Below, one piece after another: positions 5,550 to 62,960 of a DNA stretch of 63,285 nucleotides; position 1 is the first letter of the stretch, and each line of letters opens with the position of its first letter. The stretch comes from Perkinsus chesapeaki ATCC PRA-425 (Eukaryota > Protista > Perkinsozoa): positions 1 through 63,285 of the forward strand of contig JAAPAO010000144.1 in NCBI GenBank assembly GCA_013115145.1. Direction: 5' to 3'. The position numbers were made by a program, and so were the translations under genes. The notes beneath the pieces were generated by a model. The model searched no databases, had not been told where the DNA came from, and saw only the letters and a program-made list of their open reading frames with translations.

Positions 5550-7500
5550 TCGAGCTACGAGGTAGAAGTTGAGTTGAAGAAGGAGTTGATTGCGGAGCAG
5601 CTGAAGAGGCAAAGGCTGGGCAAGAACCACGCAGTGTATGAAATCCTAACAGGTCCTCGATTTTACGGCGCGCGGGAAAATCTGATAATTGGTGTTTAGA
5701 TTTCGTATACTGTGTACGTGATTTGGCTTGGATGTTCGGGGATGCCTACACGGCGGCAGGCGGTCAGCAGTGGAGAAACAACAACAGGAACAGCAACAAC
5801 AATCAGCGAAAAAGGTGCTTGTGTGCATGCGTGCAGATTAGTTCGTACCGACTTTTCCTCAATTTCAGAGGCAGAGGTGGCCCTAATTCCAATGATATTG
5901 ATTTTACGATGTGGATAGAGCCGGATGAGGTGAGACTTATTCTCATGGAGATATGCAGATGGGTTGCCTCCAGTCTCACTAAAATGCATTCTCGATTCCG
6001 TGGTGGACGAAGAGTATCAGGGTAAATCTCATTGGGATAATTTGCAGTGTTACTAGTAGCATCGCAACTCGCGTAGCAGTAACTGTTTTGATGATAGCAA
6101 GTTTTAATAGTAAATTGCTAATTAATATTACTATTAGTAGTAATAATAGGTAATATGCACGAAATGCAATCGGCGAAGGAATATGCTTATAGTTGGGGCC
6201 TCCCACTGGGGGATAGTTCTATTGCTTCAATGGCTAGGCAACTTTTTTGAAGTGTAAAACCTCGCTTTATCTTCACAGATACAGCAGCGGTACTTAAAGC
6301 GAGTGGCACCGGTTTTCCCTATCATTGGTGATTACTGTTTTACAATTGCCGATGAGATATTAACACCGAAGTCGAGTGAGGAGGAGGAAGACGGAGGCGT
6401 CTCCGAGCCAACCGGGAGTAGTGGACGATCTGGCTCCGTTTGTCGCGCACAATATGAGGCAGATACCGATGGTGATGTGAATATGGCGTCGACGGAAGAG
6501 ACTGCAGTGACGGAAGAGCCAAAGGAGAAGGTCGATGCTGGTAGTCTGCTGCTTTCTGACACCTCTAGCTCACCATCGTTGGGTTTGCTGTTGTAGGCAT
6601 TACATACAACAAAAGTGACTCTGGTGGTGATGTAGGGCTATTCTTTACTCGATCTGCCGATTGGATCCTCCTCCGAACTCATTTTCTTCAGGTCCCCACG
6701 AGCCACAACCCGCAGACGTTGGAATGACCACGGCCGGTATCGAGAGCCATGAGGAGGAGGAGGAGCCCCTAGCGATGCCTGAAGACTTGGAAGGGGCACT
6801 GGCGCTGGATATGTTGGAGGGACATGATGAAGATGAAATATATCATCCAGACACACCTGGTGAGGACTCGGTGGCTGGGTATTCTTCCAATCTTAATCAG
6901 GGTCTCCGCCTGAAAATATAGCATCGCCTGAAGCAGCAGCATCATCGCCACCGCCGCAACCGCCAGCTGAAAACGAAACTGTCAATATTACCAACTCCGG
7001 TAGGCTATCTGAGATGTCTCTACGGCGTGAACTGCAGGATTGATTTGAACGCTGAGCGGCTGGGTAACGCTGCGCTAATTTGAGTGGGAACCTTTCGCCG
7101 CAGAGGAAGTTTCCGGGAGGGTCTTTCCCAATATCTCTTGGAGCTGCTTCTTTACTGTGTGGATATTCAGTCCCACCCTCATTGATGAACGGCGTCGCAG
7201 CTGAACCAAAAGCAGAAGTATCATTGTCAACTCTTGTGGGCCCACAGAAGAAGACAGAGACGGCCGAAGAAAATGATGGTGAAATATGGTTCTGCCAGGG
7301 ATTGAACCTGGATCTTGTGCCCATCAGATAACGACGATGCTTCCTCAACGTCATCTTCATCCTCCTCTAGTGGGTCAGAGTCTTCGGGCAGCTCGTCTGA
7401 TTCGGATTCCGACTCGGGATCCTCAAACGGCTCTGATTCCAGTAGCAGCAGCGACAACGAAGACGAGGGCGGCGGGGGCGCTAACGATACCACTACGTGA
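5550..7500 (+). CDS. Multi-exon hypothetical protein, acidic/Ser-rich low-complexity C-terminus (5' end uncertain)
   Basis: Successive + strand exons (EVELKKELIAEQLKRQRLG; RGRGGPNSNDIDFTMWIEPDE; IQQRYLKRVAPVFPIIGDY; SSSSDSDSDSGSS...TTT*) bounded by GT..AG. Junction 7278/7328 restores the frame. Confidence 0.5.
7279..7327 (+). other. 49-nt GT-AG intron that is an antisense tRNA 3' half
   Basis: Reverse complement reads CT GAT GG GCACA AGAT CCAGG TTCAATC CCTGG CAGAACC A (perfect T-stem). Splicing gives ENDD|NDDASS; the unspliced frame stops at 7331. Confidence 0.7.
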
Positions 7501-7601
7501 CGACATTTCTCTCCACTGACCTTTACTGTACCATAATCGTATCCTGACCTCTCTTGTGCGTTTTGTTAGACTTCCTGATGCTAGGCAGAGCGTTTATTGA
7601 A

Positions 7602-8387
7602 ATGGCCAGGGTCTTCTTATTTGTGGGGCTGCTAGTGTGTGCCGGCTGTGGATTACCTCCGGTGTATATAGTCCGACATGCGGAGAAGCCGCAAGACTCG
7701 CCGTCTTTGGATCTTTCGCTCAGGTAACTACTACACAGTGTTATTGTTGATGACGTATCAAATGTCTAAACCTTCATCTAGAATCACGCTCCAGAACCGC
7801 CCGTTGTTTTTTGCATTCCGAGTGTGTTTTCAGAGGCGAAATCCGTGCTGCAGCATTATCGGCAGTTTTCTTCCCGAAATGGAGCCCCTCCAAGTTCGGC
7901 TCGATAGGTGAGTAGGCTTAGCCCTCTAGGCTACGCCGACTTGGAGTCTAGCTCTTGGGCAGATTGCCTTTTGTCGTGCAGATGTCGTCATCACTCAGCA
8001 ACCCTCTGATGACTTTCCTATCAAGCGCGAGCTACAAACGGCTGAAGCTATCATCGCTAACACGTCCACTCCATTGAGACTTTTCCGGTCCGTCGATGAC
8101 AGAGCGGCAACTTCGCAACCTGCTGTGTCAGGCACGCAGACGAGATAGACCTGTTGGACTACCTCGAGCGGGTAACATCTGGTGGACAAACGCCTTTGCT
8201 CGTTTGGGAACATTATAGAATTCCAGCAGTGGCCGTCGGACTTCTTCTCCGTTTCAACGACTCTTACGCGGATGCTCGGTACCCTGTATGGGCAGATGAC
8301 CGGTATGACATGCTTTGGGAACTCAATCTTGAAAGTGGCAGGATAGATCAGCATTGCTTGGTAGGTGCTAGAGCCCGTATAACGTAA
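7602..8387 (+). CDS. Secreted histidine phosphatase superfamily protein (RHAEKP type), 4 exons
   Basis: MARVFLFVGLLVCAGCG signal peptide; VYIVRHAEKP catalytic motif; GEIRAAALSAVF; LLVWEH; DDRYDMLW. Introns ~7724-7794, 7909-7981 and 8088-8131 keep the frame open. Confidence 0.7.
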
Positions 8388-8658
8388 GGTTTATATTGAG
8401 AATCAATAATTTCGTTATGGCATATCTATTCGTTGTCCTCTGAGCCCTTGATAAGGGCCCTTATGAAGGGTCTCACCTTCGCCTCGCATCAGTGCTCACA
8501 AATCCTACCCATCTGATAGTATTTGTAGAGCTTTCGGATCTCATATGCACAGGGAAGCCATCACTTTGCTGGTGTTACACCAGTGGTGTAATCCATAATT
8601 TCCGAGTCACGTTGGGCTCACATTGTACGCCTCACAAACTTCGAGACGATCCTTCAAA

Positions 8659-8951
8659 AGTTGACAGTGTCAACTGGGTGTCAACTTGACACCCAAATTT
8701 TGCAGAATCTTTGCGACAAAGTTTTTGCTTCCGGTGGTCCGGAAGTTCGAGGTCGATTTAATCGACCTGAAGATGGTTGCGGATGGTCATGATAGAATCG
8801 ACCTCGAGCTACCGGATAACTCTATGAGTCATAGAGTTATCCGGTCATGAGTCATAGACTATGACGGGGCTTCTATCCCGGTGCCCGCCTCGGGAAGCCC
8901 GGTTCGGGTCGCCGACCCGGGGTCGGTGGCTCCACAGTGAAGCCTTCACTG
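8659..8951. repeat. Cluster of perfect odd-length palindromes (1-nt centre)
   Basis: 8659-8675 (8-bp arms), 8676-8694 (9), 8750-8768 (9), 8811-8845 (17), 8912-8926 (7), 8935-8951 (8). Confidence 0.85.
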
Positions 8952-11303: not shown

Positions 11304-12062
11304 TTACAAAGAGCAAACCTCCTTCAAGGCAATACGCTTAGCGACGTTGATGCCGGTCTTGATCATACGATCTTTGCCTTCGGCAACCGTGTTTCCATGG
11401 GGATCGTAATCACCTTCATCCCACTTGAGCGGGGAACCATCAACAGTACACACAGCGGCAGCTCGAATTCCTCGAATAGCAGCCACGATAAATAACGCGG
11501 AGTTCTCCATCTCGACACCAATAGCGCCAGCAGCAGCATTTGTTGCTAGGGTTTGCTCGACGGCCGGGCTCGGATAGAATATCGCACTAGCCAAAGTGAT
11601 ACCAAAGTGAACTCTATCATAACCAAGAGACTTTGCGGTGTCACGAAGAGCGAGGCAGATCTCCGGATCAGCTACAGCAGGGAAGCCCTTTGGAGCGAGA
11701 TACTGAGTAACACCGTCTTCCGCACCAGAACCAGTCGTGATGATTAAGTCGCCTTGCTTGATTGAATCGGGCCTCAGAGATCCGCATGTTCCCATACGAA
11801 TGATAAACTTGGCACCACATTTGATAAGCTCCTCGAAACATATAGCAGCACCGGGACCACCAACACCATGAGAAGCAACAGTGAAGTCGGCACCTCCAAA
11901 AGTAACATTGAAGGTCCTGTACTCCCTGTTGTAAGCGAGCTCCTCGCATGAATCACAATACTTAGTAGCGATAAGCTCTGCACGGCCGGGATCGCCAACC
12001 ACGCAGCAAACAGGTCGGATAGAACCTTCGGTGATAGCAAGATGAGGAGCTTGATACACCAT
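11304..12062 (-). CDS. PNP: Purine nucleoside phosphorylase, Plasmodium PNP-like (PNP/UDP family), intronless, 252 aa
   Basis: VGDPGRA, SHGVGGPGAAICFEEL, RMGTCGSL, EMENSALF, DGSPLKWDEGDYD. Confidence 0.95.
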   Translation of the reverse strand: MVYQAPHLAITEGSIRPVCCVVGDPGRAELIATKYCDSCEELAYNREYRTFNVTFGGADFTVASHGVGGPGAAICFEELIKCGAKFIIRMGTCGSLRPDSIKQGDLIITTGSGAEDGVTQYLAPKGFPAVADPEICLALRDTAKSLGYDRVHFGITLASAIFYPSPAVEQTLATNAAAGAIGVEMENSALFIVAAIRGIRAAAVCTVDGSPLKWDEGDYDPHGNTVAEGKDRMIKTGINVAKRIALKEVCSL

Positions 12063-13583: not shown

Positions 13584-14299
13584 AGTTTTCTAAAATATAA
13601 TAAGTTTATTGCAAATACAAACAATGTATTTGTTTGGTGGTGGAGTGCTACCGGATGGGGCGGCTGGGCTAGCTAAGCTTAGCCACCACACAATGCACGA
13701 AGATGTCCCCATATTCCTGAATGTTGCCTATCATTCCGACAGTGGAGCCACCTAGACTCATCGCTTGGTTGTCCAACTATACATGAATCACCTGAATCTC
13801 GAGGATAGCTTGTATCGACGTTGCGCGAGTCGCTCCTCCTCCAAAGCTTCTGAGGATGCGACATAACTAGCTATCATACGCAGTCTTAAACTTTTCAGGT
13901 GTTTTTGAGATCGCAAAAGGGAATGCTTCACTCGCCGTTGATGCGTTATCTCGTTATCCGTGGATTGGGTTCTTCTTACTTCGTACCGATCAGTTAGTTC
14001 TGGAACTGCTTTCTCTCGCTTCGTGTGTTACACTACTCTTTGTGCCCACTGTCCCCTTCCATTCTTACACTCAAAGCACATGAAGTAAACGGCATCCAAG
14101 CCAACAGGATGCTTAGCAGCGGTGACTCGACTCGGCTCAGGAAACGGTCGAGTAATCTGCTTGTGGTATTAGCTAGAATGATTGAAAATCACTATGGAGC
14201 TACGTAAATAAAAGCAACACGGAGCATGAACAGGCAGGAGTTCGAACCCCGGTGACGGCGTTTTCTAGAGTTTTGCCCTACCTGGAACGGATGTATTTG

Positions 14300-42900: not shown

Positions 42901-44935
42901 TTTACAACAGGCCGTCATATGTTATTAAGCCGTCAAGTCAATTATATGTTGTAAGTTCGTCGATTCAGAGATTTCACTCGCTAAATGGAAAGTATTTGCG
43001 ACTGTGTAACCTACGTTCTACATTGGAGGACGTCGTCAGTCTAATACTCCTTTTTCAGCTTAGAGTTGTTTCATTATTGCGTTCGAAATCGAGGCTGACC
43101 CTCTTCAGACCCTCAAAGCGAGGATGAAAGTGACATGGGTTAACGTTTGCAAAGACAGACGTGTGGACCTGTCGCGCCTGTTCTCCACTTCTAGGTGTAC
43201 AAAATCCACGATGCGCAACTCATCGGTAAGTAAATACTCCGCTAGATGAATGTTATTCAGTGTCCACTTTACTTTGAAGCGTTCATTTGAACGAAAAGCC
43301 GTGCCAAACAGATTACAGAGAAAGTATTTGCCCACGAGGGCCAAGTATGGGGCATGCGCGCCGTGCGCGCACCCTTGCCCCTTAAGAGGAGCGCCACCCC
43401 AACAGGACTTACATCCACCAAAGCAAAAGCCAGTAATGTCGATGTTCGGGCCCCAGTCAGCTGGCTTAGGCAACAGTGTCTCAGCAAAGCAATATGCAAA
43501 CGGAACCTGGACGGGAATAATCCTAGGTGGAGCGATGCAGCATTTTCTTACACCCCATTTGTCGATCAGAGATCCTGCACCGTGCCACATTCCAATACTC
43601 GGGAGATGCAACACTTGACGTCGGAAAGTGTTCACTGCTGATGCCACACCACGCCACTGTATCTGAATAGCGATGAGAAATCGTAAGATTGCAAGATATG
43701 CAAGAAATCCACTCGCCTGTTCCATCCATCGATAACTCATCTTTTTCCAATAAGGGTTGGTGTCAGGTTCGTTAACGCAGAGGGGATGTCCGACTGCTTC
43801 AGTCTTGGTCCACGGCATGGTGAAGAACCTGAGAGAATCGTATATGTATTTATATACATTTACATTCATATATTATTTTTATGCCACCTCTTTACGTCTG
43901 TTTTACATTTCACTTCGCATTATATTTCTACTTCGCTACTACTCAGGTTCGCATTACTTACATTTGTAGCGGCACACCCAAACGCTCCGCCAGATGGACA
44001 TGCGTATATGATGGAGGATTAGCTATAATAGCATGGGTTACCCATCGCATAGAACTCACACCTGAACGGGACACTGCACACAAAAAAACTGCACGCATGC
44101 ACACGTTACTCTGCACAGCCGCCCAACTGCCGACGGTATTGTTCTCCCATCCCGGAGGAAGGTATATCTCTCGCAGTGTAGTCTGCATCTCGGGACCATG
44201 AAACATAAAGTGGTAAAGATCTCGTGGACTGAGCAGCAGGTCGGGGCCCATTCCAGGATTCTCCTCTGCGTATCTAACATCGATTATGAGCAAACATTCC
44301 GTCCGCGAAAGCACTGCTCTTCCCCAATCACAAGCGAAGTAGGATTCCCATCGAATTTAATCACCATAAATTTGAGCTAGGCCAACTGCAAGTTCGAGTA
44401 TAGCTAAACAAGTAACAAGCATCACCGAGTTCGACGATCCACTTTCGCAGAAAGTAAAGAAAATCTTCTTAGGAAGGAAATAATACCGTCAGTAGTACGA
44501 ATGATTTAATTATCTTGTTCCCTTCGATTGAATAATGAGTTTTACTTCATTAAAGTCTCCGGCTGCCAATGGCCTTTCTCAGCCAGGGCGAGCGGAAAGA
44601 ATTCGATTCCTTGTTTGGTGACGAAGTCTCGGAACTTGTCGTGGGTACATATCCTCGAACGATGCCCGTGGGCGTTCAGGGCCTACGAAAACAAATGGAA
44701 CAATAGGGCTGGGCCGAGGATCGAACTCGGGACCTCTCGCACCCAAAGCGAGAATCATACTACTAGACCACACAGCCGATGAGAAACAAGAACTAATCTA
44801 GGGCGCTGCCCATTCCCAGCAGGCCATACTTACCTTTGCAAGTGCCATGAACGGCTGCACATCTCCTCTACTACCCACCGTTATCAACGTTATATTCATA
44901 CGTGGCACATTATCTCCTTCGGCTCGGGGGAATAG
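36909..44935 (-). CDS. Sterol 3-beta-glucosyltransferase (GT1, UGT80/Atg26-like) with C-terminal extension; 5' end lies further upstream and is uncertain
   Basis: [19 protein letters not shown]; [17 protein letters not shown]; [23 protein letters not shown]; FFTMPW; [17 protein letters not shown]; [10 protein letters not shown]; ILHKGW; [22 protein letters not shown]; FFGDQPLWG. Quoted junctions were checked for phase. Confidence 0.88.
37201..37251 (-). other. 51-nt intron containing a tRNA-Trp-like 3' half (antisense)
   Basis: + strand reads TT CCA AA TCCAG AGGTC GCGGG TTCGAAC CCCAC. Splicing gives VKER|RKEEE. Confidence 0.7.
40597..40643 (-). other. 47-nt intron that is a sense tRNA 3' portion plus T-run
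   Basis: GTGAGA AGGCC GCAGG TTCGAAC TCTGC ATGTGTC A TTTT ATATTAG. Splicing gives GDLSPI|YRAVLAAV in the conserved GT1 domain. Confidence 0.8.
41916..42852 (+). CDS. Signal-peptide GNAT acetyltransferase nested antisense in a glucosyltransferase intron
   Basis: [19 protein letters not shown] signal peptide; LVVGFIV; [18 protein letters not shown] (motif A); [19 protein letters not shown] (motif B). Internal micro-exons are not fully resolved. Confidence 0.65.
44706..44777 (-). tRNA. trnP-UGG: tRNA-Pro(TGG), 72 nt, intronic
   Basis: GGCTGTG TG GTCTAGTAGTATGAT T CTCGC TTTGGGT GCGAG AGGTC CCGAG TTCGATC CTCGG CCCAGCC C. Perfect anticodon and T stems; one acceptor mismatch; the D-loop has AG in place of the usual GG. 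Confidence 0.85.
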
Positions 44936-45967
44936 TACCGGTATCTGACGAACGCTAAGTAAATACTAAGTTACGCGCAACGCGCCGAGTGCATCCAAGT
45001 CTACAACTTCCACTCAGGTGTGTTGCTCAAAATCACTTCGATCCAATTATAAATAAACGCCAACGGAACAACTCAAGAAACACGGGAGCGGCAAAGCTCC
45101 ACTATTCCAGAGCTCCACCACCTTCCGACATGAGACATCTACAAAGATTAACGGAGGTGCGCCTCGGCATGAAAAAATGGGAGGAAACTTCATGGCCTAG
45201 AGATTAATTTAGCCTCGGGCAAATGTTTTCAAGTATCTTAAGTCATTCCAAATGCGTAGATATGATATAAATTGTCTTAGGAAACATATAGAGCAAAAGC
45301 AATACTCTCCAATGGAGCTCCAAAGGAGCGTCTGACAGTATTGAGCGGCAGGTTCCTCGGCTCTCTGCAAAGCTTACCGAGGGACCTTCCAGGTATGCAA
45401 AAAGAAACGGAGAAAGCTCAATCCCGAATACGTCATTCTAGCCTCGTAGAAACGTGTTCCTCGATTGTCAAAAGTCGGTCCTAATGCAGAGACATGATAT
45501 GGATTAGACCCAGCGGAGAATGCATTCCATCTGCGCTCGACATTTGGTGGCCCCCCGATCCCGGCTATCTTTTCCTAGAGACTTTAGCAAATCAAAGTGA
45601 AGCTCACCAGCTGTGCATTGGTAGCCACCACACCGTTAAGAACGGTTTCAAGCCTCCTAGCCCTTGTATGGCCAACACCACCACTCAGATCATCCAGACA
45701 ATCAAGGCTCGTGTCGACATACCTAAAGACACATGCATTCTCAATGCTGACGCGAAACCTCAATCGCCGCGTCTATAGGCGAGGAAATACAGCTGGGAGC
45801 AATTTCACACATCACCAAGCAAGAGAGTTTATCAAGATAAAGAATTAGCATCCCGTAGTAACGAAATATGAGATTCATATATCATTAAGACTCACTAGTA
45901 AAAACCTACCAGGAATATCTCGAATAAACAGGCAAGATTTCAAGACAGTAGAAGATCATCCCCCGAC

Positions 45968-48900
45968 TTACTGCGTCCACTCGTCATCCCCACAGGGATC
46001 TCCATGGAGGCTATCCTGTATACCGACGAGTCTGCTTCTCAATTCGGCCGCCGATACCAACACTTTATACGCCTTTTCTGAGAGGAGAAATGCAGAAAAA
46101 ATGCTCCCGCTGGGATTCGTACTCGTGCTCTCTTTCACTGTGATGTAATACATGGTTCTTTCGCTGTATTCTGTCGACCATCCTTCAATCACAATTTTCT
46201 CGCACGGATTCGTCGGCACAGGATCTCTGGTGAGGGCGAAAAGTAGCCGCCAATGACTGTCAATAGCTAGAGTGTACAGGAACCCTGAGGCAATCCAAAG
46301 GTCCCGGGTTCGATCCCTAGCAAGAGCATTTCATACCCATTATCATCATCAGGAGGAAGTTCACCAAACCCGCCACAACCAGCTGTGCCGAGGAGGTATC
46401 CAGCCACAGTAGGGCGCTGAAATAAGGGCAAGCAACAAGCGTGCTCCATAAAATCCACCAAGTCACGCGAGATGAGAATGGTAACATGATCGAAGTTTTC
46501 ACCAAGTTGCGAAAGCATTAATTTTGATATAATCGATAGTGAGATCAAAACCCTTCAAGAAACCCGAAACCCGAAACCCGGATCGAAATCTCACCTGAAT
46601 GTAACTGCCAGTGTAACCACACAATCCGAGAATAATAGGAATAAATATCCCATATGTGACATTGTTATATGAGTTGCTATTATAGTAAAAAGGCCCTGAA
46701 AAAGACAACTGGTGATGGTGCTATGGACCACAGCCTAGGGTGATCAGAACAGGATACAAGTTAAACAACGTGAGAGAAGAAGATTAGAAATGATTATAGT
46801 AAATAATCGAATGTTTAAATTTGACATATCACCAAAGGGCCAATCACGCGTGGAGTAAATTATCAACGAAAGAGGATATTTCCGAAATACTGCCGAGCGA
46901 GACACTCTTCTCGTCTCGACAAATCGCAAAACGAGCAAGTATCCGAAATGTGCCCAACTTTACCGATACTAGCAAATTTGTATTAATTGAGGAATTTCCG
47001 CAAACTTTCAAGAGATGCGTGACATTGAGCAAATTAAAGATTTTTTGTTCTCGGTCACAGTTATTACCGGATCTGTATCCCATACAGTATGATAGAACAC
47101 CGTGCTTCCCTCGAACTCTATCGACTGAAAAAGATGACCATAAGTCAACCTTTCTCGTATCCTGCACGCTTCAAGCTAAGATATTTCTTACCTTCCTAGC
47201 AGATCGATCAAAGTTATAAACATATACACAAGAGAATAGACAACACGCCAATAGGAACATCATAGCCGACAGCATCAGCCTCCGCCGACGGCCATAGGCG
47301 AACATTGCAATGAATCCAGCCACCAGTAGCATTACCGCTGATAATACTTGAACCTGCTGATAAAGGGAGTGAACCATACATTCTATATTATCTAAGCTGG
47401 TCTACTACTATAAAATGTAGGGAGGCAGATGGAAAGGGGGAAATTCACATTAGTAAGCGGATTGTCACCAGATCCCAATGTGTCATAGAAGAACATAAGA
47501 TACTCAGGGAACAGTTAGGAGGCCATTTCACGGTACTTTTCCACCAGAAGACAAACATATTTCCTATTATATCTCCTCCTCCGTATCACTAGTAACATAT
47601 TTCCTATCAAACTCCTTTCTATTATATCTCCTCCTCCGTATCACTAGTAACATATTTCCTATCAAACTCCTTTCTATTATATCTCCTCCTCCGTATCACT
47701 AGTAACATATTTCCTATTATATCTCCTCCTCCGTATCACTAGTAACATATTTCCCACTACAATTCCTATGACCCGTTGACCCTATAAACACGTTTTTGCC
47801 AGGCTAGATGAACAACCACGTTAACCGAAGATCCACGAGAATCTTCATTAATTTCGCACCCGAAAGATTCTCTCCAAATCACCCTCAGTATTACCGCTAT
47901 CCCGGCATACACTGCGAAATCCGGTTCGCCATTCGGACCTCTAAAAGGCTCCACTGCCGCGAATATCATAGCCACTAGTAACCTATAAAACAGCACTTCT
48001 CCCAAGTACGCTCACAAACAGCAGCGTCATTATTACAATATAAAACCGATGACTGCCCATCTTGAGTGGTGAGTGATCCAATAAGTATGCCGAGATGAAT
48101 ACCAAACCCTATACCTGGAAATGAGACACTTACAGAAAAACTAACGACAACAGGATTCCCACTGCTGTCTCACAAATGGGGTTGAGAACGAAACGTTCGT
48201 AGAAGGAACCTCTTCTTCAACTTGTTCTTTCCATTTTCTACTTCATCGACTCTCTTCTATTTTCCTTGGGCCCGATTAATCAAGGCTATTTCATAGATCA
48301 TCGCATATTCTCAAACTTGGGCCCGACTAATTCCATTCATGTTGAATATTCATAAGCGTTGCCATTCCCAGATGAGACACTCGTATTTTTGGCTGCATGC
48401 TTCCCAAATTTGCGCGTGAAAAAGTGTCCAACGAAAATTCGTGGCACATTTCCCCCTGAAAACGCTCTTTCACACTCGTGAAACGTTTCCGAGAGGCTAG
48501 GCCCCACCACTGATTGGTGTGCTATCAATATATAATTGATAGAACGGAGATATGACACTTTGTAATAGCTAATATACCCTAATAGCCTTTACACAATATT
48601 CTATAATAAAAATATAATAATTCCTAATAGGAATTTCCTATAAGAATTTAATGTTAATAATACCAGCTGCCGCAACCATGAAGACTTCCTCCGAGGAAAG
48701 ATGCTCGCTTCCTCCTATAGTGATATCGCCCACCTCACAGTATAAGCCTCGTGCCACACTCACGTTGCAAAACGAGGAAATTTTCCCGAAACTTCCGGGA
48801 ATTTTTGAAAAATTTCCCGAGATTTTAGGAAATTTTCCGCTTCCCGTTATCACGTTTGTTCATCCACTGTCCGCGGGAACCTTCTGAAGAAGAATACATT

Positions 48901-50677
48901 ATAGCTCTTCTTGAAGTACTCAATCATTTGATGACTAACACCCTAAAAATGTAAAACAAAAATCACTTCGCTCCGCTGTAGCTGCCAATATTACATGTAA
49001 CGCCAATTCGTATGATCCATTTTCCTTTTTACGGAACACCAAACGATCGTTCAGCGCCGAGAACAAATCCGATTGTGCTCGGAGGATATTAGTACCACCG
49101 ACCAGACAGAGACCGAAGATCTAAACACAGCTAGAGGTGTCAGAAAGAATAGGAATCATAATAATAAGAACGAAAAACCACATTTTTCGTAGGTACGAAT
49201 AGGAAGGAATGGTACGCATTTTTTGCAAATGCAAGTAGTATGTTATAAAGATCAATCAAGTCTCCCATATTTTGTGAACTACAACACGTAAACCCCACGG
49301 GGAAAGCATCCAAGTTGACCTAATAAATATCCTGGCGCGCAAGAATCCTTCCCCTTTTATTACAAACCAATGACATGCAATACCCGCCCACAATTGCAGC
49401 AAATAAGATGCCACAGCATCGCTCTGTGCTGTGTAGGCAATCACCGACAAACTTGTACCTAAAACCAATCATGACTGATGTATACACAGATGAAACGGTT
49501 GATCGATTTGCAAATATGACTGTCACGTACCTATTAGTAATACAAAATTAGTTAGTGTCGCAACACTCGGTATGAGTCTCGCTGTCAGTCCAACAGCAAC
49601 CAGCATCAATGGCACCGGTAAGGCATACACTGTAGTCTCATTATATCCTTCCGCGGCAAGAATCACAAACTCAGAGATGACAACAAGAATAGTCGTCACT
49701 GCAACAACCGTGTGAGCGTGCTTTGTCGTGCGCCAAATAATTAATACCATTCCTCCGAGGAACCAAATCCCCTAAGGCCGGAAATTACACGGAAAATTAC
49801 ACTTTTTGATTCTTACCGGAGAAATGACAAAGTAAAAGGTTCCCGCCCAGGAGGAGAACGGAGCTTCTACAGAGAACTCCTCTTGTTTGAAGAGATCCTT
49901 CAGAAGATAATGCACCACCAGATGTTGTGTAAGATGTCCCAGAAATGATAGGAAAAGGAACATGACCCAATACCGAAAGTTCCAAGTGTTGAAGGTCGAC
50001 CAGAACTGCACTGATAGATTTCCTAACAAAAAATACATTGGAAAAAAGCATCCACAAATTTGCGAATTTTCCAAAACAGATTTCCAGAAATTTCTGCCAA
50101 CTTTTCCTTCTAAGTTCTTGTTGTCTGGTAAATTCCATTTTGGAGATAGAGTTCAAATTGGGCAAATATCGTAGGACACTCCAAAGAGATCAAAAGCAGA
50201 GAATACCAAATTATCATTTGTTTTGCCCTTTTATATCAATTCTGCGAGATAATATCAAAAACAGCACTGCTGGAAGATACGCAAAAAGTTGCATTAGCAT
50301 TTCACGGTAACCAATTCCCGATAGAGAATCCAAAGGTTGACTACGCGAGGCTAGTAATTAGTAAAACTACAGGGAAAAACTTATAATTTATATTCCAGAA
50401 AATTGTAAATAAGACTAAAAAATGACTAAATATGTAAAATAGGACTTCTATATTATATAGCAATATCATGGATTATATTTTCCCTCGAATCCCTCCCTTC
50501 CCTTATATTACTCATGAATAGGAAGTCGCCTGCACCAAGATATCTATTCTCGTAGTCATGGTACAACGCAGCTAGGCTGAGCCTCTGCGATGCTCCCAGA
50601 CGAGCTGTCTTTTGCGTCCGGAACGTCGAACGTATCCTGTTGGCTCTGCTCTCGATTGGTGGAGCCGATGATACCAC
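45968..50677 (-). CDS. Polytopic membrane protein exons (one or more genes)
   Basis: Many hydrophobic exons (VAVTTILVVISEFVILAA; AVMLLVAGFIAMFAY; GIFIPIILGLCGY; VVAGLVNFLLMMIMG|FLYTLAI) flanked by GT/AG. Full model not resolved. Confidence 0.5.
46285..46336 (-). other. 52-nt intron that is an antisense tRNA 3' half
   Basis: + strand CTGAGGCAATCCAAAGGTC CCGGG TTCGATC CCTAG CAAGAGC A TTT. Splicing joins LLMMIMG|FLYTLAID into the 45968 ORF. Confidence 0.7.
47556..47756. repeat. Minisatellite, 40/55-bp units (40-55-55-40)
   Basis: CATATTTCCTAT(CAAACTCCTTTCTAT)TATATCTCCTCCTCCGTATCACTAGTAA repeated. Confidence 0.95.
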
Positions 50678-51506: not shown

Positions 51507-54196
51507 ATGTCAAACATGCAAGATACGAACGAGGTTGACTATGAGCCATTCGATCCATCGGAATTGGTTCAAGCTGCTCAGCCCGATGCCGCTGATGTAA
51601 AAGCCAACAGCAATATTCCCCGTGCGAAGTTTATTGTAATACGGGAGGGATGACAGAGCGTATCTTTTGAAATCTGGGGTCAAATGCCACAAGATCCATC
51701 CGAGGTTAAATATGATTAAACTCTTCTGAGATCAAATGTGATAAGATCTCTATAAGGTCAAAAAGATAAGATTCCTCTGAGGTCAAAAAGTATAAGATTC
51801 TCCTGAGGTCAAAGGCGACAGGATTCCTCTCAGGTCAGAAGTGATGAGACGTTTCTCACTTCCTTTGTAACAAACTAAAACTTAGCCAATTGCCTCTGGT
51901 CTATTTTCACGTACTTGAAATAATACTTGTTTTTCTCTTGTACATTTTCACTTTGTCGTATTCAGGAGAACGTCGAGACATTCACCGGCAAGAGGGATCC
52001 CATGGCGATTCTGGGAGGCCTTAGGGAACTATTGAGCAAGTAGTGGTGGCATATGGGACAGACATATCGTATACAGTCTAAGATAGGAAATACACACGTA
52101 TATAGGGAAAGGGGCTGCCTCAGTGAGTATATGGTAATTGCAGCTTGTTGAGGTGTTAATGTCAATACAACTGATAAAAGCACTTGTACATTTCGGATGA
52201 GTAGGCAAGCAATGGAGTAACTATGAATGTGTAAAGGATTAGTTGATTGGCAATATTTTGCAAATTTATTTATCATTATGCGTCACGAATGACTAATAAT
52301 AATAAGTCGTATTGGTATGTATTAGTCCGTTATCAAAAACGTTCATTTGTATTCAGTATTTATATACATATGAGTAGATACCAGTACATGAACGAGCAGC
52401 TCATGTCACAACGCCGGTCGATTAAAAGGAAACTCCCTGATATTCAACAAGCTAAGGAGACGGTAACATATTTGAAGAAGCAAAAGGAGGGAGGAGTCGG
52501 AGAGTAGGAGGAAATACGGTATGAATAACTTGTATTGGATGTATTTAGGTATCGATGTCGATTTCCATTGACAGATAATGCTCATGCTAGTGCTAAGATA
52601 AACCCACAGGTGATAGAGGGGTAAAGGAATTATTGGGTGTTTACGGAGAGAGCGGTATGAAACATCGATAGGAGGAACGTAATTGATTACTATGTGGATT
52701 ACGACAAAAAGTGTGTGCGAAGATTCAACCATCACGTCGGCTATCGCTTAGCTTCCGGTTGCTTGGCAAACAGTGAGGTGTATGTATCTATCTGAGATAC
52801 ATACTTTAGATTGTGGTGATGCCCAATGGGGGCCTTTCGGGTACTTACACCTTGTTGTAAAATATGAATGGTGTTCGCCGGTCATTAAAGAGTTTGAATA
52901 TTGGAATCACTTAAAATCTGTCTACAAGGACTAGTGGAGAGGGTCGGCGATTAAGTCCCGATATTACTATTAATACTAATATAAGCTTGTTATTTATGCC
53001 TGATTAGTTATATATTATGATAGTATTTCCCTATTCTTCAATATCGTATTTATATCATAAATTTTATAAAGCAATTTACGTTCCCTGCATTGTTGGTAAA
53101 TCCATGAGTAAAGGGTCCTATTCACTATGGGAGTGATTCGTCTCTTTTCAGGAAGTGGATTCGGTGTGTTTATGGTTAGGAGCTAACATATTGTTGGAAT
53201 ACAAGTTGGACGAAGCAAGTACTAATAGGCTCAGTTGGTCTAGTGGATTGATTCTAGTTTTGTAATCATTTCACTCGGGTTCTATCCCGAGGAGAGGCAA
53301 GTTGAGCGTATATGTATAGTTGCAAAGTCGTGTTCGTGTACTACTTCTGTTGAAAACCAGAAACCACTTTCTGGTTTCTTCTTCGCCATGCTCTTCAACC
53401 ATTCGCTGTGGGGAATTGTCGTCAGTTCCAAAGGCAGTATATTATGCTGTAACTTTACGGGATTATTCGTCTCCAGAAAAATGTGTAATGCCGACATCGC
53501 GCTGCTTTCCAAAATGTGCATGATTTCTTCTTTAGCCGATTTATTGAATGAAAATGATGGGAGTGCTCGAAAGAGTCTATCCGATTTGGAACAGGGAATT
53601 GCGGTGATAAGAGATCAAATAACTACAACGGAGGTACTACTATTAGAGAGCCTGTGCTACTATATTTTCCGGGTTTACTCTGGATGCATTCTACTGAACT
53701 ACACGGTAGCCTTTTGTAGTACTATGCCACTCAATTTCAGGATGCTACGCTCAATAGCAGACGATAAATCATTGAAAAAAAGGAAATATTCTATCTCATT
53801 CGGGGTGCTCCATTGGAGGCATTACAGGGTATTTTTTGTCTCCCTTTAGAATGTGCTATCCAGAGCAACCCGTTGTCGAATGTATATCCGAAACTTTCGA
53901 AACTGCAAATCATTCACTAGCAAATTCGCAAGAACCGCATCTTGAATCGCCCCTTTCATATTTGATACTGATGGTAGATGATTCTTCAGAATTTCTAGGA
54001 GATCGATAAACGGATTAAATACGCATCACGCGTAATAGTGCGATTATTTCTCATGGAAGCTGCGTGCTGCTGCTCTCATTGGAGGCTTGGAAATGGTATC
54101 TTTAAGGTTAACATAGCGCGAGTTCACAATTACAATGTGAAACTTCGCAACGATCAACGTCAAGCTGCTGCGAATAAGACAGAGAACGCCTCGTAG
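51507..54196 (+). CDS. PFDN3: Prefoldin subunit 3, multi-exon
   Basis: SNIPRAKFI|ENVETF; YQYMNEQLMSQRRSIKRKLPDI; FPLTDNAHASAKI; VCLWLGANILLEYKLDEA; IRDQITTTE|VNIARVHNYNV. Confidence 0.88.
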
Positions 54197-59221: not shown

Positions 59222-59560
59222 GCAGCAAAGAGAGCTATGTTGCTGGGCTTTCCGGGTGGAGGATGGTAATTTCGTGGCGCAGTGACGGTCTTATTTGGCT
59301 TCAAGGTACCCCAATCCCATCACTGGTCCAAGTTCACCATTTGACGATCCCAGCATATTGCGAGCGTTGCCTGGTGGGAGTCCGGTATACCCGTATGGTG
59401 GACCGAAGGTGAGATTAATAATGCGCCCCCTGGGAATCGAACCTGCGGTCTATCGCTTACTAGACTGGTAAACTGAGTATCATGTACAATTGGTATCATA
59501 ACAAATTCGTTGCTCATTTTCCGATATCTTTCAGCTTCATCCCGAGTACGACTTCGCCGT
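59222..59560 (+). CDS. Partial multi-exon hypothetical gene
   Basis: AAKRAMLLGFPGGGW|YPNPITGPSSPFDDPSILRALPGGSPVYPYGGPK|TGKLSIMYNWYH. Both introns remove in-frame stops. Confidence 0.5.
59409..59463 (+). other. 55-nt intron that is an antisense tRNA-Thr(AGT)-like 3' half
   Basis: Reverse complement CT AGT AA GCGAT AGACC GCAGG TTCGATT CCCAG GGGGCGC A; the intron AG is the antisense of C32-T33. Confidence 0.75.
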
Positions 59561-60185: not shown

Positions 60186-60359
60186 TGATTCAGCAGCTGG
60201 TGTGAGATTCACATGATTGTCGGCTGTACACGAGCTTTGCTCAGCGCCACAAAATTGTTGGGTTAAGTGAAAACCTGGTACCATTTAACCGGGTTTCGGG
60301 TTTCCGGGGAAGGGTCCAATAATCTTTTGACAGCTTATTTGCTCGGCGTTGTGCTGTTG

Positions 60360-62130
60360 ATGAATCCTAGTGGTTTCCATCCGATTGGCTTCGCTGCACA
60401 ATCGGGGGGACAGGATGAAAACAATAGGACTAGTTCGCAGCAACAGCCTGCTGCTGCTCCACAATGGCAATATTTTCCCGCGCGCCATCAAAATCATCCG
60501 GGGAACGTAAGCCGCGGGGGAGGCCACTATCACCAATACCAGCTTGGTCAGCCGAGCCACCTCTTTTTTGGGTGCTGGAAAAAATATCGAGAATTTTTTC
60601 TTGCACATGTAAATGATCACGTGGATACACTTCAGCACCTATGATGATATTTCTTAACTTCATGAAATCGAGAAACTTGAAATTTTTTGGTGGAAACTTG
60701 CTAGCAGTGTGGGAATATCTGTTCGGCTTCCTCAACCGATGGGTATGACTTGTGAGCTGGATTTCCTTACCGTTATACCGTTATACGGGACTTATGGTCA
60801 AAAAGCGTGTTTTCGGCTGTTCGGTATTTTCCATATTTTCCTAAAATTTTTCTCAAGCTCGACTACAGATGTAGCCAGCCACGTGCGCATTTTCCCATAC
60901 TGCTTGCTAAACTGTGGTATCTTCAAATAAGATGAAGATTTGCTCGACTCATTGGAAAGTTGGATTCGGAGTTCACCGTGATAACTGTCGGCTTTTCTTC
61001 GTCGCGGAATGGCTCTCGAGATTCCTCCCGATTGGCTTACGAAACTCCGATCTGATTCCAGTCTATCTGGATTTAACATTCTCCCTCAAGACATGAGCTT
61101 CACCAGGCTGCTGCACTATTTTCATTTCGTTTAGGTCCAGGCCCCACCGCAGGTAACTTACGTACGATCTACTACCTCTTGCACACAGTACGGGGAGGAG
61201 GGAGGGGTTCATGTGCGTCGCTCCGCTAAGATTTTGTGGATTTTTAGATACTCTAGTGCGCCGATAGGACACCATAATCCTACCGAGGAACAGAAACAGA
61301 ATATGTTCCGAGGGCAGAATTTGGGGGCGATGATGCCTCCTACTAATCCAGCTCTAGGAGGGGGATCAGTCTCTCAGCCATTACAGCCTCAGTATCACCA
61401 AGGTGGATATAGTGCATATGGACAAGGGGTAAGACTTGCCATCCAAAGGTCGTTGGTTCGATCCAGCGGTAGCATAGAGGCACTGGGGAGGTCTCTTATT
61501 CGGTTTCCCGTCTCTATTAAGTCTTCCCAGGCTGGCTCGAACGAAATAAGCTTGGTAGAACTGGTAACTGACTTCTGGGAACTCCGCAAAGCTTTCTGAA
61601 GGAACGATAGATGTTCGGAAATCGTTTCCGATTTGCCATTTTTCCACGCAGCTTGAACTGCGGGTTTCTGATCGTCTAACTAAGCTCATCGAAAGTGTTC
61701 GTATGAAATCAATGCTGAGAGGCCCGCCGGAATTTCGTAAATTTTTTTTAATTTTCTTCTCTACCGTGGTAAAGATAACCCCATATATTTTGCCACGGTT
61801 CTCTGCGTTTCTTAGGCGCCCGTCGAGCGTGTTGTAGTGCCGCAGAGATTCTATACCGGCAGCGGCGGTGGCGTCCGTACAGATATGAATTACACTTCTG
61901 GACAACATTATCCGACGCCAAGAGGAGGGGTGCGCATCCTCCTTCATACCGCTCCTTCCTCTAATCCTTATCAGGTTGCATCCCGTGTTCGACGATATCC
62001 TAGTGAAAGCGTGGCGTCTTCGTCATCTTCAGTAGCGGTGTCAGCCACTGGCACTGTACGATCGCACGAGCCAGTTTCGGCCGTGTACGGAGCGTATCGG
62101 CAGTACGATGCAAGCAGGTGGGATTCCTGA
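60360..62130 (+). CDS. Multi-exon Q/P/G/Y-rich low-complexity protein
   Basis: Exons MNPSGFHPIG..QQQP.., QPQYHQGGYSAYGQG and ..YGAYRQYDASRWDS* separated by A/T-run introns. Confidence 0.45.
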
Positions 62131-62274
62131 GATGGAGAATGTTACTCTTCGAGTTGGAATTTTTTGACGAGAACTTGTTCCAGCGCGGCTGGACCAGCTG
62201 GGGTGGGGAAACTATTTTGGGTTCGAGAATCTGTGATAAGACTTCATAGGTTCAAGCTACGTGCGCGTTAGTTC

Positions 62275-62500
62275 GGGTGAAGCTAAGATACTTATGCGTA
62301 TGTTTTGCACGGGTGAAGCTAAGATCCTTATGCGTATGTTTTGCACGGGTGAAGCTAAGATACTTATGCGTATGTTTTGCACGGGTCAAGCTAAGATCCT
62401 CATGCGTATGTTTTGCACGGGTGAAGCTAAGATCCTTATGCGTATGTTTTGCACGGGTGAAGCTAAGATCCTCATGCGTTAGTTTTGCATGGGTGAAGTG
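62275..62500. repeat. 36-bp tandem repeat, about 6 copies
   Basis: GGTGAAGCTAAGAT(A/C)CT(T/C)ATGCGTATGTTTTGCACG units starting near 62277, 62313, 62349, 62385, 62421 and 62457. Confidence 0.95.
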
Positions 62501-62584
62501 AAGCTAGTTAGGCCCCGATTCTACAAGCAAAACGACTTCATTTTTTTCTGTTTTAGCGGTAACTCATTCACTTACGGCAATCAG

Positions 62585-62960
62585 GCTACGACGACATTCA
62601 AAGCTACTACAGGGTCGATGCGTAAGCTGGAGGTCGTGGGTTCGATCCCGGCACATGTCATTTAATGTCAGGAAGCAGCGCTGTTATATTACTGATGGGA
62701 GCGTACAGTGAAGAGCTTTGCATCAGCGCGAAGCAGGCCATTCTCATGGTTCCAGGAGTCCTGGCTGTGACGACTCAGCAGGTGCGTTGAGGAAATGCAA
62801 GATTGCAAGATTGCAAGATTTGTCATCACTTTGATTGATAGGTTACGTGGGCGCGGAAACAGAAAGCTTATGCGACGGTATCGTTGGTAAGGGGGCTTAA
62901 TTCAGCAATGCAAAGCGCATTGTTGCGGTCGTTGGAGGAAGCGGGGATACAGGTGAGGTG
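62585..62960 (+). CDS. Partial multi-exon hypothetical gene
   Basis: ATTTFKATTGSMR|SSAVILLMGAYSEELCISAKQAILMVPGVLAVTTQQ|VTWARKQKAYATVSL; phases are consistent. Confidence 0.45.
62622..62671 (+). other. 50-nt intron that is a sense tRNA-Thr(CGT)-like 3' half
   Basis: C|GT AA GCTGG AGGTC GTGGG TTCGATC CCGGC ACATGTC A TTT AATGTCAG; the donor GTAAG is anticodon-loop sequence. Confidence 0.7.

What the first reader, a model, noticed from the sequence alone, without database searches (positions are those of the whole stretch)
7279..62671. Candidate family of tRNA-derived spliceosomal introns across unrelated genes
Seen: introns at 7279-7327, 37201-37251, 38084-38929 (both ends), 40597-40643, 46285-46336, 59409-59463 and 62622-62671, and possibly 14204-14268, are mostly tRNA 3'-portion sequence, most with canonical spacing (variable loop, 5-bp T-stem, TTC(G/A)A loop, 7-nt acceptor strand, discriminator A). 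They lie in at least five unrelated genes and in both orientations, and splicing restores reading frames, including conserved GT1 motifs. Established: introners create introns by transposition, tRNA-derived SINEs exist, and tRNA halves arise by anticodon-loop cleavage. Inference: either tRNA-half cDNA or a tRNA-derived mini-element inserts into exons and is spliced out, or intronic tRNA genes are eroded down to minimal intron size. I know of no description of this as an intron source.
Basis: partly seen in the sequence, partly recalled or inferred. Interest (0 to 1): 0.9.

Follow-up and report, generated by a model that had tools for sequence, protein, structure and literature searches.

The report
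Old tRNA-gene tails inside Perkinsus introns
In this shellfish parasite, about a dozen introns carry the worn-down tail of an old tRNA gene. These introns existed before the tRNA pieces arrived, and the 11-base docking site for the factor TFIIIC has been kept while the rest decayed, so this is a kept DNA signal and not a new way of making introns.

Summary
The window is a whole contig of Perkinsus chesapeaki (JAAPAO010000144.1). All copies share one register: variable loop, T arm, 7 nt, discriminator, T-run, no CCA. A model built from them finds three more.

Two corrections. Four of the eight reported sites lie in one 13-kb sterol-glucosyltransferase-like (GT1) gene, so there are three or four host genes, not five. 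And 14204-14268 is not shown to be an intron.

New here:
- An intact tRNA-Pro gene sits in another intron of that GT1 gene, and also in P. olseni.
- All 25 mapped introns of the P. olseni orthologue of that GT1 gene, tail-bearing ones included, share position and phase with introns of an old paralogue that has no tails. The tails therefore did not create these introns.
- Between P. chesapeaki and P. olseni, the strict B-box positions differ at 8%. The rest of the tail differs at 41% and synonymous sites at 51%.

Best reading: relics of tRNA genes that settled in existing introns, with the B box kept by selection. TFIIIC docking is the likely reason but is untested. The scan already reported this on other contigs of this genome.

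The parts
37100..50035 (-). Host gene: sterol 3-beta-glucosyltransferase-like (GT1) gene with about 35 introns. It holds five tail-bearing introns, one weak candidate and the tRNA-Pro intron.
   Evidence: tblastn of paralogue P0122 (1452 aa) covers its residues 84-1423 in order. P. olseni orthologue exons map one by one.
44683..44833 (-). 151-nt GT-AG intron containing an intact tRNA-Pro(TGG) gene (44706-44777) in the sense orientation. The tRNA 3' end lies 23 nt from the 3' splice site.
   Evidence: ARAGORN. Rfam tRNA 48.4 bits. Splicing joins [14 protein letters not shown] to ALNAHGH. The same tRNA is in the same intron in P. olseni, L006 2216-2287.
46285..46336 (-). 52-nt intron. The tail is antisense to the gene (tRNA sense is the plus strand, 46292-46332).
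   Evidence: R1 model 42.3 bits. Homology-defined intron. The P. olseni orthologous intron keeps the tail: GGTTCGATCCC versus GGTTCAATCCC.
46078..46122 (-). 45-nt intron with a weak sense-strand tail-like match (46098-46138) that overlaps the 5' splice site. A possible member only.
   Evidence: R1 23.5 bits, E = 8e-5. Intron bounds come from homology. No counterpart in P. olseni.
40597..40643 (-). 47-nt intron made almost entirely of a sense tail: GTGAG, AGGCC, GCAGG TTCGAAC TCTGC, ATGTGTC, A, TTTTATATTAG.
   Evidence: R1 35.8 bits. The GT1 motif [14 protein letters not shown]|IYRAVL is restored. The tail is kept in both P. olseni assemblies.
38084..38929 (-). 846-nt intron with a sense tail at each end (38893-38933 and 38087-38127). 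In P. olseni the same intron is 122-133 nt and consists of the two tails in tandem, 70-81 nt apart by assembly. P. chesapeaki has about 750 nt of unique DNA between them.
   Evidence: R1 38.8 and 28.9 bits. Orthologous introns in L003, L005 and L006. The insert has no other copy in 89 kb.
37201..37251 (-). 51-nt intron. The tail is antisense (tRNA sense is the plus strand, 37216-37256), and the acceptor complement doubles as the 5' splice site GTAAGTC.
   Evidence: R1 39.3 bits. Intron from homology. The P. olseni intron is 119 nt with two antisense tails 80 nt apart.
3799..3910 (+). 112-nt intron of the mRNA-triphosphatase gene. A sense tail (3868-3908) sits at its 3' end: TCGGG TTCGATT CTTTG GGGGGGT C TATTAG.
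   Evidence: R1 25 bits. The joint 3796->3909 (cut +2, GT..AG) is seen in cDNA-like contigs of runs X1 and X2; two X2 contigs carry it, and a contig identical to the window lies on the exon just after it. Gene range.
7279..7327 (+). 49-nt putative intron of the same gene. The tail is antisense (7283-7323 on the minus strand) with a perfect T stem, CCAGG/CCTGG.
   Evidence: R1 31.8 bits. The frame stays open. No RNA or homology support was obtained (one search has no coverage there).
14224..14264 (+). Tail in non-coding DNA about 640 nt upstream of the PNP gene 12837-13583 (minus strand). Not shown to be a plus-strand intron.
   Evidence: R1 29.5 bits. An orthologous B box is kept upstream of the PNP gene in P. 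olseni (L005 15884) and P. marinus (L007 13109), with scrambled flanks.
59409..59463 (+). 55-nt putative intron. The tail is antisense (59418-59458 on the minus strand) and its T stem has decayed to 2 of 5 pairs.
   Evidence: R1 32.2 bits. The frame stays open. No RNA coverage.
61429..61815 (+). 387-nt intron with a sense tail (61440-61478) directly after the 5' splice site. The T loop has a 1-nt deletion.
   Evidence: R1 15.4 bits, E = 0.04. Joint 61428->61817 in a cDNA-like contig. The 3' AG is at 61814-61815.
62622..62671 (+). 50-nt intron made of a sense tail: GTAAGCTGG, AGGTC, GTGGG TTCGATC CCGGC, ACATGTC, A, TTTAATGTCAG.
   Evidence: R1 38.6 bits. A contig of run X1 skips it (joint 62622->62674 with one mismatched letter).
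53228..53300 (+). Possible decayed full-length tRNA gene: an exact A-box match TGGTCTAGTGG, with a T arm CTCGGG-TTCTAT-CCCGAG 43 nt downstream. The B box is mutated.
   Evidence: (16.6 bits). Not recognised by ARAGORN or the Rfam tRNA model, so it is read by eye only.

Best explanation
These are relics of RNA-polymerase-III tRNA genes that came to lie inside introns that already existed.

In the full state, still seen at 44683-44833, a working tRNA-Pro gene sits in a 151-nt intron. Its 3' end and T-rich trailer lie next to the 3' splice site. When such a nested gene is no longer needed as a tRNA, substitutions and deletions shrink the intron back towards the usual 45-55 nt. What survives is the last third of the gene.

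Within that remnant, only the B box (tRNA positions 52-62, GGTTCRANNCC) and the adjacent variable-loop bases are held constant. The T stem, acceptor strand and flanks drift at the neutral rate.

The kept part is the internal promoter element that the tauB module of TFIIIC recognises. It is kept in either orientation relative to the host gene, at any distance from the splice sites, and also outside verified introns. I therefore infer that it works at the DNA level as a TFIIIC docking site without Pol III transcription, like ETC sites.

Shown: the tRNA-gene origin, the greater age of the introns, the age of the tails, and the excess conservation of the B box.
Inferred: TFIIIC binding, and whatever it does to chromatin or to Pol II.
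For: Origin from tRNA genes:
- Fixed tRNA register, T-rich trailer and no CCA.
- 33-fold excess of the motif.
- An intact tRNA-Pro nested in the same gene, conserved in P. olseni.
- Tandem relics 80-81 nt apart.

Introns came first:
- 25 of 25 intron positions and phases are shared with paralogue P0122.
- The paralogue's 35 introns have no R1 hit and at best 7 of 9 B-box matches. Its P. olseni orthologue is tail-free too.

Age and selection:
- All six strong window tails that have orthologous coverage are present in P. olseni. One is also present in P. marinus.
- Differences per site: B-box strict positions 4/48 (0.08); positions 57/59/60 0.33; variable loop 0.17; outer T stem 0.50; acceptor 0.43; upstream 0.50. 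Synonymous third positions 366/717 (0.51).
- Fisher test, strict positions against the rest of the tail: p = 1.1e-5.

DNA level rather than RNA level:
- T-stem pairing is not maintained.
- Both orientations keep the tRNA-strand asymmetry: positions 59-60 are never AA.
- Conserved copies lie at the 5' end of long introns and upstream of the PNP gene.
- A-box motifs are not enriched: 7 against 3.8 expected.

ETC sites are defined as B-box sites bound by TFIIIC without TFIIIB or Pol III (PMC12409998).
Against: - TFIIIC binding was not and cannot be tested here. I did not check that Perkinsus encodes a B-box-binding subunit.
- The sample is small: six orthologous pairs. The three P. olseni assemblies are not independent.
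- Tail-free short introns of the same gene are not fully scrambled either (45/169 = 0.27 at aligned sites). The contrast with them is weaker (p = 0.006).
- Orthologous tails were located with a model that rewards the B box.
- There is turnover. About 4 of 10 P. olseni relics have no counterpart in the window; for example the window's 19100-19206 has decayed.
- The relics are strongly clustered. There are none in the 26-kb L004 or the 20.7-kb L002. Neither neutral decay nor a general function explains this.
- For the two other host genes, the age of the introns was not tested.
Confidence: 0.6

Rival explanations
1. Intron gain. Reverse-transcribed tRNA halves, or a tRNA-derived mini-element, insert into exons. 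They bring or create splice sites, so each tail marks a newly made intron.
For: Several 47-55-nt introns are almost nothing but the tail. In these, the T-run supplies the pyrimidine tract before AG, or the acceptor complement supplies GTAAGT. The introns in the mRNA-triphosphatase gene and in the 59-63 kb gene were not tested for age.
Against: All tail-bearing GT1 introns occupy positions and phases shared with a tail-free paralogue that split off before P. chesapeaki and P. olseni diverged. The tails are shared with P. olseni although synonymous sites differ at 51%. There is no CCA and no near-identical family, and by eye no flanking direct repeat (not tested systematically). One long intron was screened with the repeat finder without result.
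Confidence: 0.04
2. Insertion of 5'-truncated retrocopies. Pre-tRNA transcripts ending in the U-run are reverse-transcribed from the 3' end and land, already truncated, in existing introns. The 3'-only anatomy then reflects the insertion mechanism, not selective retention.
For: Every copy has the complete 3' end (acceptor, discriminator, T-run, no CCA), and the 5' end varies. 5' halves and A boxes are not enriched.
Against: An intact nested tRNA gene has the same layout. Tandem copies 80-81 nt apart leave room for a full-length second unit. No A-tail is present and no flanking direct repeat was seen by eye. This model does not explain why the B box alone stays constant afterwards.
Confidence: 0.12
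3. An RNA-level role in splicing. The T-arm hairpin, or the TTCGA core, acts in the pre-mRNA as a structural element, branch site or intronic enhancer for very short introns.
For: In 47-52-nt introns the core lies about 24-26 nt upstream of the 3' splice site in either orientation, a normal branch-site distance. The core GGTTCGAACC is nearly palindromic. Intron 46285-46336 is conserved over almost its whole length.
Against: Stem pairing is not maintained: 2-5 of 5 pairs, with no compensatory pattern. The conserved block is 11 nt and keeps the tRNA-strand asymmetry in both orientations. Conserved copies sit next to the 5' splice site of 133-846-nt introns and outside verified introns. The paralogue splices 35 equally short introns without any such motif.
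Confidence: 0.1
4. Neutral junk. The tails are decaying tRNA pseudogenes with no function. The B box looks conserved because of how copies were found, low local mutation, or short-tract gene conversion from the many real tRNA genes.
For: Tail-free introns are also partly conserved (0.27 divergence). There is turnover between species and patchy distribution. Perkinsus has hundreds of tRNA gene copies that could act as conversion donors (PMC3706591).
Against: Tails chosen in the window alone still show 44 of 48 strict positions unchanged in the other species, while adjacent tail positions differ at 41%. The changes that do occur fall on the positions that are free in the B-box consensus. The core contains a CpG, which I would expect to decay faster, not slower (my own knowledge). 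Conversion from tRNA genes should also restore the T stems and acceptor ends, which drift.
Confidence: 0.12

Closest known systems
ETC (extra TFIIIC) sites of yeasts, C. elegans and mammals, and COC sites of S. pombe
   Same: Isolated B-box motifs without an A box or a tRNA body, conserved between species. They are thought to bind TFIIIC without Pol III and to act on chromatin (definition from PMC12409998; the COC sites are from my own knowledge).
   Different: The Perkinsus copies are clearly tRNA-gene remnants that still carry the variable loop, the spacing of the acceptor strand and the T-run. They sit mostly inside tiny spliceosomal introns of protein-coding genes, at up to one intron in four to six in some genes. 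TFIIIC occupancy is untested.
tRNA genes nested in introns of protein-coding genes (common in C. elegans and other animals; my own knowledge)
   Same: The tRNA-Pro at 44706-44777 is exactly this: a conserved, intact Pol III gene inside a Pol II intron.
   Different: The other dozen copies are not genes. They do not fold as tRNA and lack the 5' two-thirds.
Introners and introner-like elements (Micromonas, Aureococcus, fungi, Amoebophrya; PMC7789003)
   Same: A recurring sequence type that fills many introns of unrelated genes, in both orientations.
   Different: Introners are near-identical multi-copy families that create new introns, often with direct or inverted repeats at the boundaries. Here the copies share only the tRNA consensus, the introns are older than the tails, and no boundary repeats were seen.
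tRNA-derived SINEs
   Same: Derived from Pol III tRNA genes and carrying a B box.
   Different: SINEs keep the A-box head, add a tRNA-unrelated body and a 3' tail, and show target-site duplications (my own knowledge). None of this is present: A-box motifs 7 against 3.8 expected, and total length about 35-40 nt.
Dada DNA transposons of P. marinus that insert into tRNA genes (Kojima and Jurka 2013, PMC3706591)
   Same: The same genus. They show that Perkinsus has unusually many tRNA gene copies, and mobile DNA tied to them.
   Different: Dada elements are 4.7-11 kb transposase-bearing elements that insert in the D-arm region. The long inserts in the window's introns are unique sequence without terminal repeats.

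Membership tests
Introner / introner-like element | Multi-copy family of near-identical sequence | tested here: not met
   The 11 aligned copies share only the tRNA-consensus columns. The acceptor and upstream parts all differ; mean column identity is 62%.
Introner / introner-like element | Creates introns at new positions (presence/absence between relatives) | tested here: not met
   25 of 25 intron positions and phases are shared with the tail-free paralogue. The tails are shared with P. olseni.
Introner / introner-like element | Target-site duplication or terminal repeats at intron boundaries | tested here: inconclusive
   None seen by eye at the eight boundaries. The repeat finder was run on one intron only. 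Old elements could have lost such repeats.
tRNA-derived SINE | tRNA-related head with both A and B boxes, followed by an unrelated body and a 3' tail | tested here: not met
   No A-box enrichment. The copies are 35-40 nt and end at the tRNA gene's own T-run.
cDNA of mature tRNA halves (tRF/tiRNA) | 3' CCA after the discriminator | tested here: not met
   The discriminator is followed by a T-rich stretch (TTT in most), never by CCA, in all 11 copies.
Functional tRNA gene nested in an intron (applies to 44706-44777 only) | Cloverleaf above the curated threshold, conserved in a relative, inside a verified intron | tested here: met
   ARAGORN tRNA-Pro(TGG) and Rfam 48.4 bits against a threshold of 29. 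The same gene is in the orthologous intron of P. olseni. The intron is defined by homology.
ETC-type TFIIIC site | B-box consensus present without an A box or tRNA body | tested here: met
   9/9 or 8/9 consensus positions in the strong copies. No tRNA-model hit. A box not enriched.
ETC-type TFIIIC site | Motif conserved between species above background | tested here: met
   0.08 against 0.41 (rest of the tail), 0.27 (control introns) and 0.51 (synonymous sites). n = 6 pairs.
ETC-type TFIIIC site | TFIIIC bound in vivo without TFIIIB or Pol III | not testable with these tools
   Needs ChIP-seq or CUT&RUN in Perkinsus.

The most novel reading that the evidence does not exclude
Perkinsus keeps a genome-wide set of hundreds to thousands of TFIIIC docking sites, recycled from dead tRNA genes and parked inside tiny introns of particular genes. 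Bound TFIIIC would act there on Pol II transcription, co-transcriptional splicing or chromosome folding. That would be an intragenic ETC system of a density not known in any other eukaryote.
Probability: 0.3. Interest if true: 0.8.

Novelty: new variant of a known kind. Interest (0 to 1): 0.6.

Why it matters
If the reading holds, it removes a tempting but wrong claim: that this is a new route of intron gain. It replaces that claim with a testable one. In an alveolate parasite, dead tRNA genes inside introns are pared down to their TFIIIC-binding element, and that element is then kept for tens of millions of years.

This would give a natural, dense, easily recognised set of B-box-only sites within genes. 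ETC-type sites are few in yeast and hard to interpret in mammals, so such a set could help show what TFIIIC does away from Pol III genes.

It also bears on annotation. In Perkinsus, a B-box tail is a good marker of a real intron, and tRNA scans with partial hits should not be read as tRNA pseudogene noise.

Tried and rejected
- Three attempts at an ab initio exon-chaining gene model timed out, over-predicted or under-predicted. I dropped them in favour of homology.
- A protein search with the ORF 43108-43872 found nothing. That ORF turned out to mix GT1 exons with intron sequence.
- RNA-seq confirmation was mostly unavailable. Only two small runs with a species label were listed, and they share no words with 36.5-41.5 kb. 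They still gave joints for three tail-bearing introns but not for 7279 or 59409.
- I could not reach the P. marinus GT1 orthologue. The P. marinus PPase/PNP locus (L007) has no GT1 upstream, and the P. marinus PNP locus L002 is not syntenic.
- I considered the idea that the long intron inserts are Dada-type or other repeats seeded at tRNA genes. It found no support: the inserts have no second copy in 89 kb and no terminal repeats.
- The Rfam tRNA model gave nothing on the relic at 3799-3910 or on the possible pseudo-tRNA at 53228-53300, even in a tiny search space. My by-eye reading of a D-loop remnant (TAGATGAATTGG) upstream of the 3880 tail is therefore unsupported.

Full report
WHAT THE WINDOW IS. 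A protein search with the single-exon nucleoside-phosphorylase (PNP) ORF returned the window's own product. It also returned Perkinsus marinus, P. olseni and P. chesapeaki relatives. The look-up of that product identified the window as the complete contig JAAPAO010000144.1 of assembly GCA_013115145.1, whose other contigs' proteins are named Perkinsus chesapeaki. Earlier notes of this scan name the same genome and report the same phenomenon on at least ten other contigs. I treated those notes as leads and re-tested the claims here.

THE OBSERVATION.
- A regular expression for a T arm with at least 4 of 5 stem pairs gives 12 hits against 2.5 +/- 1.5.
- Aligned in tRNA sense, the copies share one ungapped register: an AGGTC-like variable loop, 5 nt, TTCRANY, 5 nt, 7 nt, a discriminator (A in 8 of 11), and a T-rich trailer. 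CCA is never present.
- A covariance model built from them (R1) re-finds all of them. It adds 46098-46138 (minus strand), 53263-53303 and 61440-61478.
- They are not tRNAs. ARAGORN and the Rfam tRNA model see only one gene in the window, tRNA-Pro(TGG) at 44706-44777. T stems retain only 2-5 of 5 pairs.

ARE THEY INTRONS?
- Removing each interval leaves an open frame.
- tblastn with a 1452-aa P. chesapeaki paralogue (P0122) lays out one sterol-glucosyltransferase-like (GT1) gene on the minus strand from about 50035 to 37100.
- Exact splice maps of the annotated P. olseni orthologues, transferred exon by exon to the window, give 25 introns.
- Two small runs carrying the species label hold cDNA-like contigs. 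These skip 62622-62671. They also skip 61429-61815, which has a tail right after its 5' splice site.
- The same runs skip 3799-3910, which has a tail at its 3' end. Two contigs of run X2 carry that joint, and a contig identical to the window lies on the exon just after it.
- 7279-7327 and 59409-59463 have no support beyond the reading frame.
- 14204-14268 lies upstream of a minus-strand PNP gene, within that gene's annotated range. It is not shown to be a plus-strand intron.

CORRECTION OF THE GENE COUNT. The hosts are that gene, the mRNA-triphosphatase gene at 2628-8850, one or two plus-strand genes at 59-63 kb, and the PNP upstream region.

AN INTACT PROGENITOR. The tRNA-Pro gene lies in the sense orientation inside a 151-nt GT-AG intron (44683-44833). 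Removing that intron joins ...[14 protein letters not shown] to ALNAHGH..., the classical N-terminal GT1 motif. Its 3' end is followed by TATTGTTCCATTTGTTTTCGTAG, the same layout as the sense tails (3' end, T-run, AG). P. olseni has the same tRNA in the same intron (L006 2216-2287).

THE INTRONS ARE OLDER THAN THE TAILS.
- The GT1 gene has an old paralogue pair on another P. chesapeaki contig (L004). P. olseni has its own orthologue of that paralogue (P0272), so the duplication predates the split of the two species.
- In a protein alignment, all 25 introns of the P. olseni orthologue, apart from one terminal annotation artefact, share alignment position (within one column) and phase with an intron of paralogue P0122. 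This includes every tail-bearing intron and the tRNA-Pro intron.
- The paralogue's 35 introns have a median length of 48 nt. They give no R1 hit at E <= 0.1, and their best B-box match is 4-7 of 9.
- Its P. olseni orthologue is also tail-free inside the gene.
- So, at least in this gene, the tRNA pieces did not create the introns. They entered existing introns in one paralogue lineage, or were lost from the other.

THE TAILS ARE OLD, AND THE B BOX IS HELD.
- Each of the six strong window tails with orthologous coverage has a counterpart at the same place in P. olseni. The PNP-upstream tail also has one in P. marinus.
- In P. olseni the 846-nt intron is only 122-133 nt and consists of the two tails in tandem. 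P. chesapeaki has about 750 nt of unique DNA inserted between them.
- In the ungapped tail register, P. chesapeaki and P. olseni differ as follows:
  - strict B-box positions (52-56, 58, 61, 62): 4/48 = 0.08
  - free positions 57, 59, 60: 0.33
  - variable loop: 0.17
  - outer T stem: 0.50
  - acceptor strand: 0.43
  - upstream flank: 0.50
  - synonymous third positions of the same gene: 366/717 = 0.51
- Fisher test, strict positions against the rest of the tail: p = 1.1e-5.
- The tails were chosen in the window. Under neutrality their state in the other species is then unbiased, and keeping 44 of 48 positions at roughly 45-50% neutral divergence is not expected.

CAVEATS.
- Tail-free short introns of the gene differ at only 0.27 of aligned sites, so against them p is 0.006.
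- There are only six pairs, and the P. olseni assemblies are not independent.
- Roughly 4 of 10 P. olseni relics have no partner in the window; for example 19100-19206 has decayed.

ORIGIN.
- The absence of CCA and the T-rich trailer point to gene or pre-tRNA sequence, not mature tRNA halves.
- A-box motifs are not enriched: 7 against 3.8 expected, and 7 of 100 shuffles reach that count. Only the 3' third survives.
- In both double-tail introns of P. olseni (assembly L006) the copies are 80-81 nt apart, one tRNA gene plus a short spacer. This suggests tandem full-length genes whose 5' parts have decayed in place.
- Where a tail abuts the 5' splice site (38929, 61429), the 5' part must have been deleted, because the exon boundary is ancient.
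- 5'-truncated retrocopies landing in existing introns remain possible. That model does not explain the later constancy of the B box.

HOW IT LIKELY WORKS.
- The conserved block is the element that the tauB module of TFIIIC recognises in tRNA genes.
- It is kept irrespective of orientation to the host gene. It also keeps the asymmetry of the tRNA strand: TT at positions 54-55, variable 59-60, never the palindromic AA.
- It is kept at any distance from the splice sites, and also upstream of the PNP gene in three species.
- Stem pairing is not kept.
- This favours recognition of DNA, as at ETC sites. Those are B-box sites bound by TFIIIC without TFIIIB or Pol III, with proposed barrier or insulator roles (PMC12409998).
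- A pre-mRNA role (hairpin, branch site, enhancer) cannot be excluded for the 47-52-nt introns, where the core lies about 25 nt from the 3' splice site. It does not fit the copies in long introns, and the paralogue's equally short introns do without it.

UNEXPLAINED. The relics are patchy. There are about 13 in this 63-kb contig and at least 9 in the P. olseni orthologous GT1 locus. There are none in the 26-kb L004 of the same genome, nor in a 20.7-kb P. marinus locus.

LITERATURE. Searches for Perkinsus with intron and tRNA, for tRNA-derived intron gain, and for B box or TFIIIC with introns found no description of this. The nearest items are:
- Dada transposons that target the many tRNA genes of P. 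marinus (PMC3706591).
- Introner elements of Amoebophrya, which have boundary repeats and no tRNA link (PMC7789003).

VERDICT.
The gene count was overstated, and one site is not a demonstrated intron.
- The intron-gain reading is rejected for the one gene where it could be tested.
- The eroded-intronic-tRNA-gene reading is supported. It is extended by evidence that the B box is under constraint.
- TFIIIC docking is the most economical mechanism, but it is inferred, not shown.

Noticed in passing
window 40756-43412, 38084-38929, 44945-45607, 39962-40373: Introns of this GT1 gene are greatly expanded compared with the same introns in the paralogue, which are 40-99 nt. One is 2657 nt here, against 259 nt in P. 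olseni and 47 nt in the paralogue. The extra DNA has no second copy in the window or in L004.
   Followed up: partly
window 43663-43716 and 37649-37693 (minus strand): Two homology-defined introns of the GT1 gene begin with GC (GCGAGT, GCAAGT) instead of GT. Their P. olseni counterparts begin with GT.
   Followed up: no
window 44714-44730: The working tRNA-Pro has a B box (AGTTCGATCCT, 7 of 9 consensus positions) that is further from the consensus than most of the dead relics (8-9 of 9).
   Followed up: partly
window 62274-62498 and 62996-63285: Two tandem arrays: 36 nt x 6.2 copies (94% matches; it would encode GEAKILMRMFCT repeats) and 55 nt x 5.3 copies (98% matches) running to the contig end.
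   Followed up: partly
window 14884-31662 (minus strand): A series of long ORFs (218-322 aa) with strong coding-like codon usage and no Pfam match. Part of this region (16405-21781) is orthologous to a 555-aa gene that lies next to PPase in P. olseni. P. chesapeaki has roughly 17 kb more DNA between PPase and PNP than P. olseni.
   Followed up: partly
L005 166-8060 (P. olseni JABANN010000554.1): The deposited gene model P0274 fuses the GT1 gene with the downstream inorganic pyrophosphatase gene through a 1302-nt 'intron'. Several 260-690-nt 'introns' in the P. olseni models may hide missed exons.
   Followed up: no
L008 11802-11842 and 13837-13877; L006 835-875 and 12408-12447: More tail relics in other P. 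olseni genes (a gene with DNA polymerase epsilon subunit B and DAD domains, a KH/TPR gene, and the gene downstream of GT1). The feature is therefore not special to this locus.
   Followed up: no
window 60332-61853 and 3409-5098: Most contigs of runs X1 and X2 are only about 88-93% identical to the window, while one is 100% identical. Either a second haplotype, strain or paralogue is expressed, or the runs come from a mixed or related isolate.
   Followed up: no
window 11304-12062 and 12837-13583 (minus strand): Two tandem intron-less PNP/uridine-phosphorylase genes, 77.5% identical to each other. The second is 93% identical to a P. marinus protein. Bacterial relatives score almost as well as alveolate ones in the protein search.
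   Followed up: no
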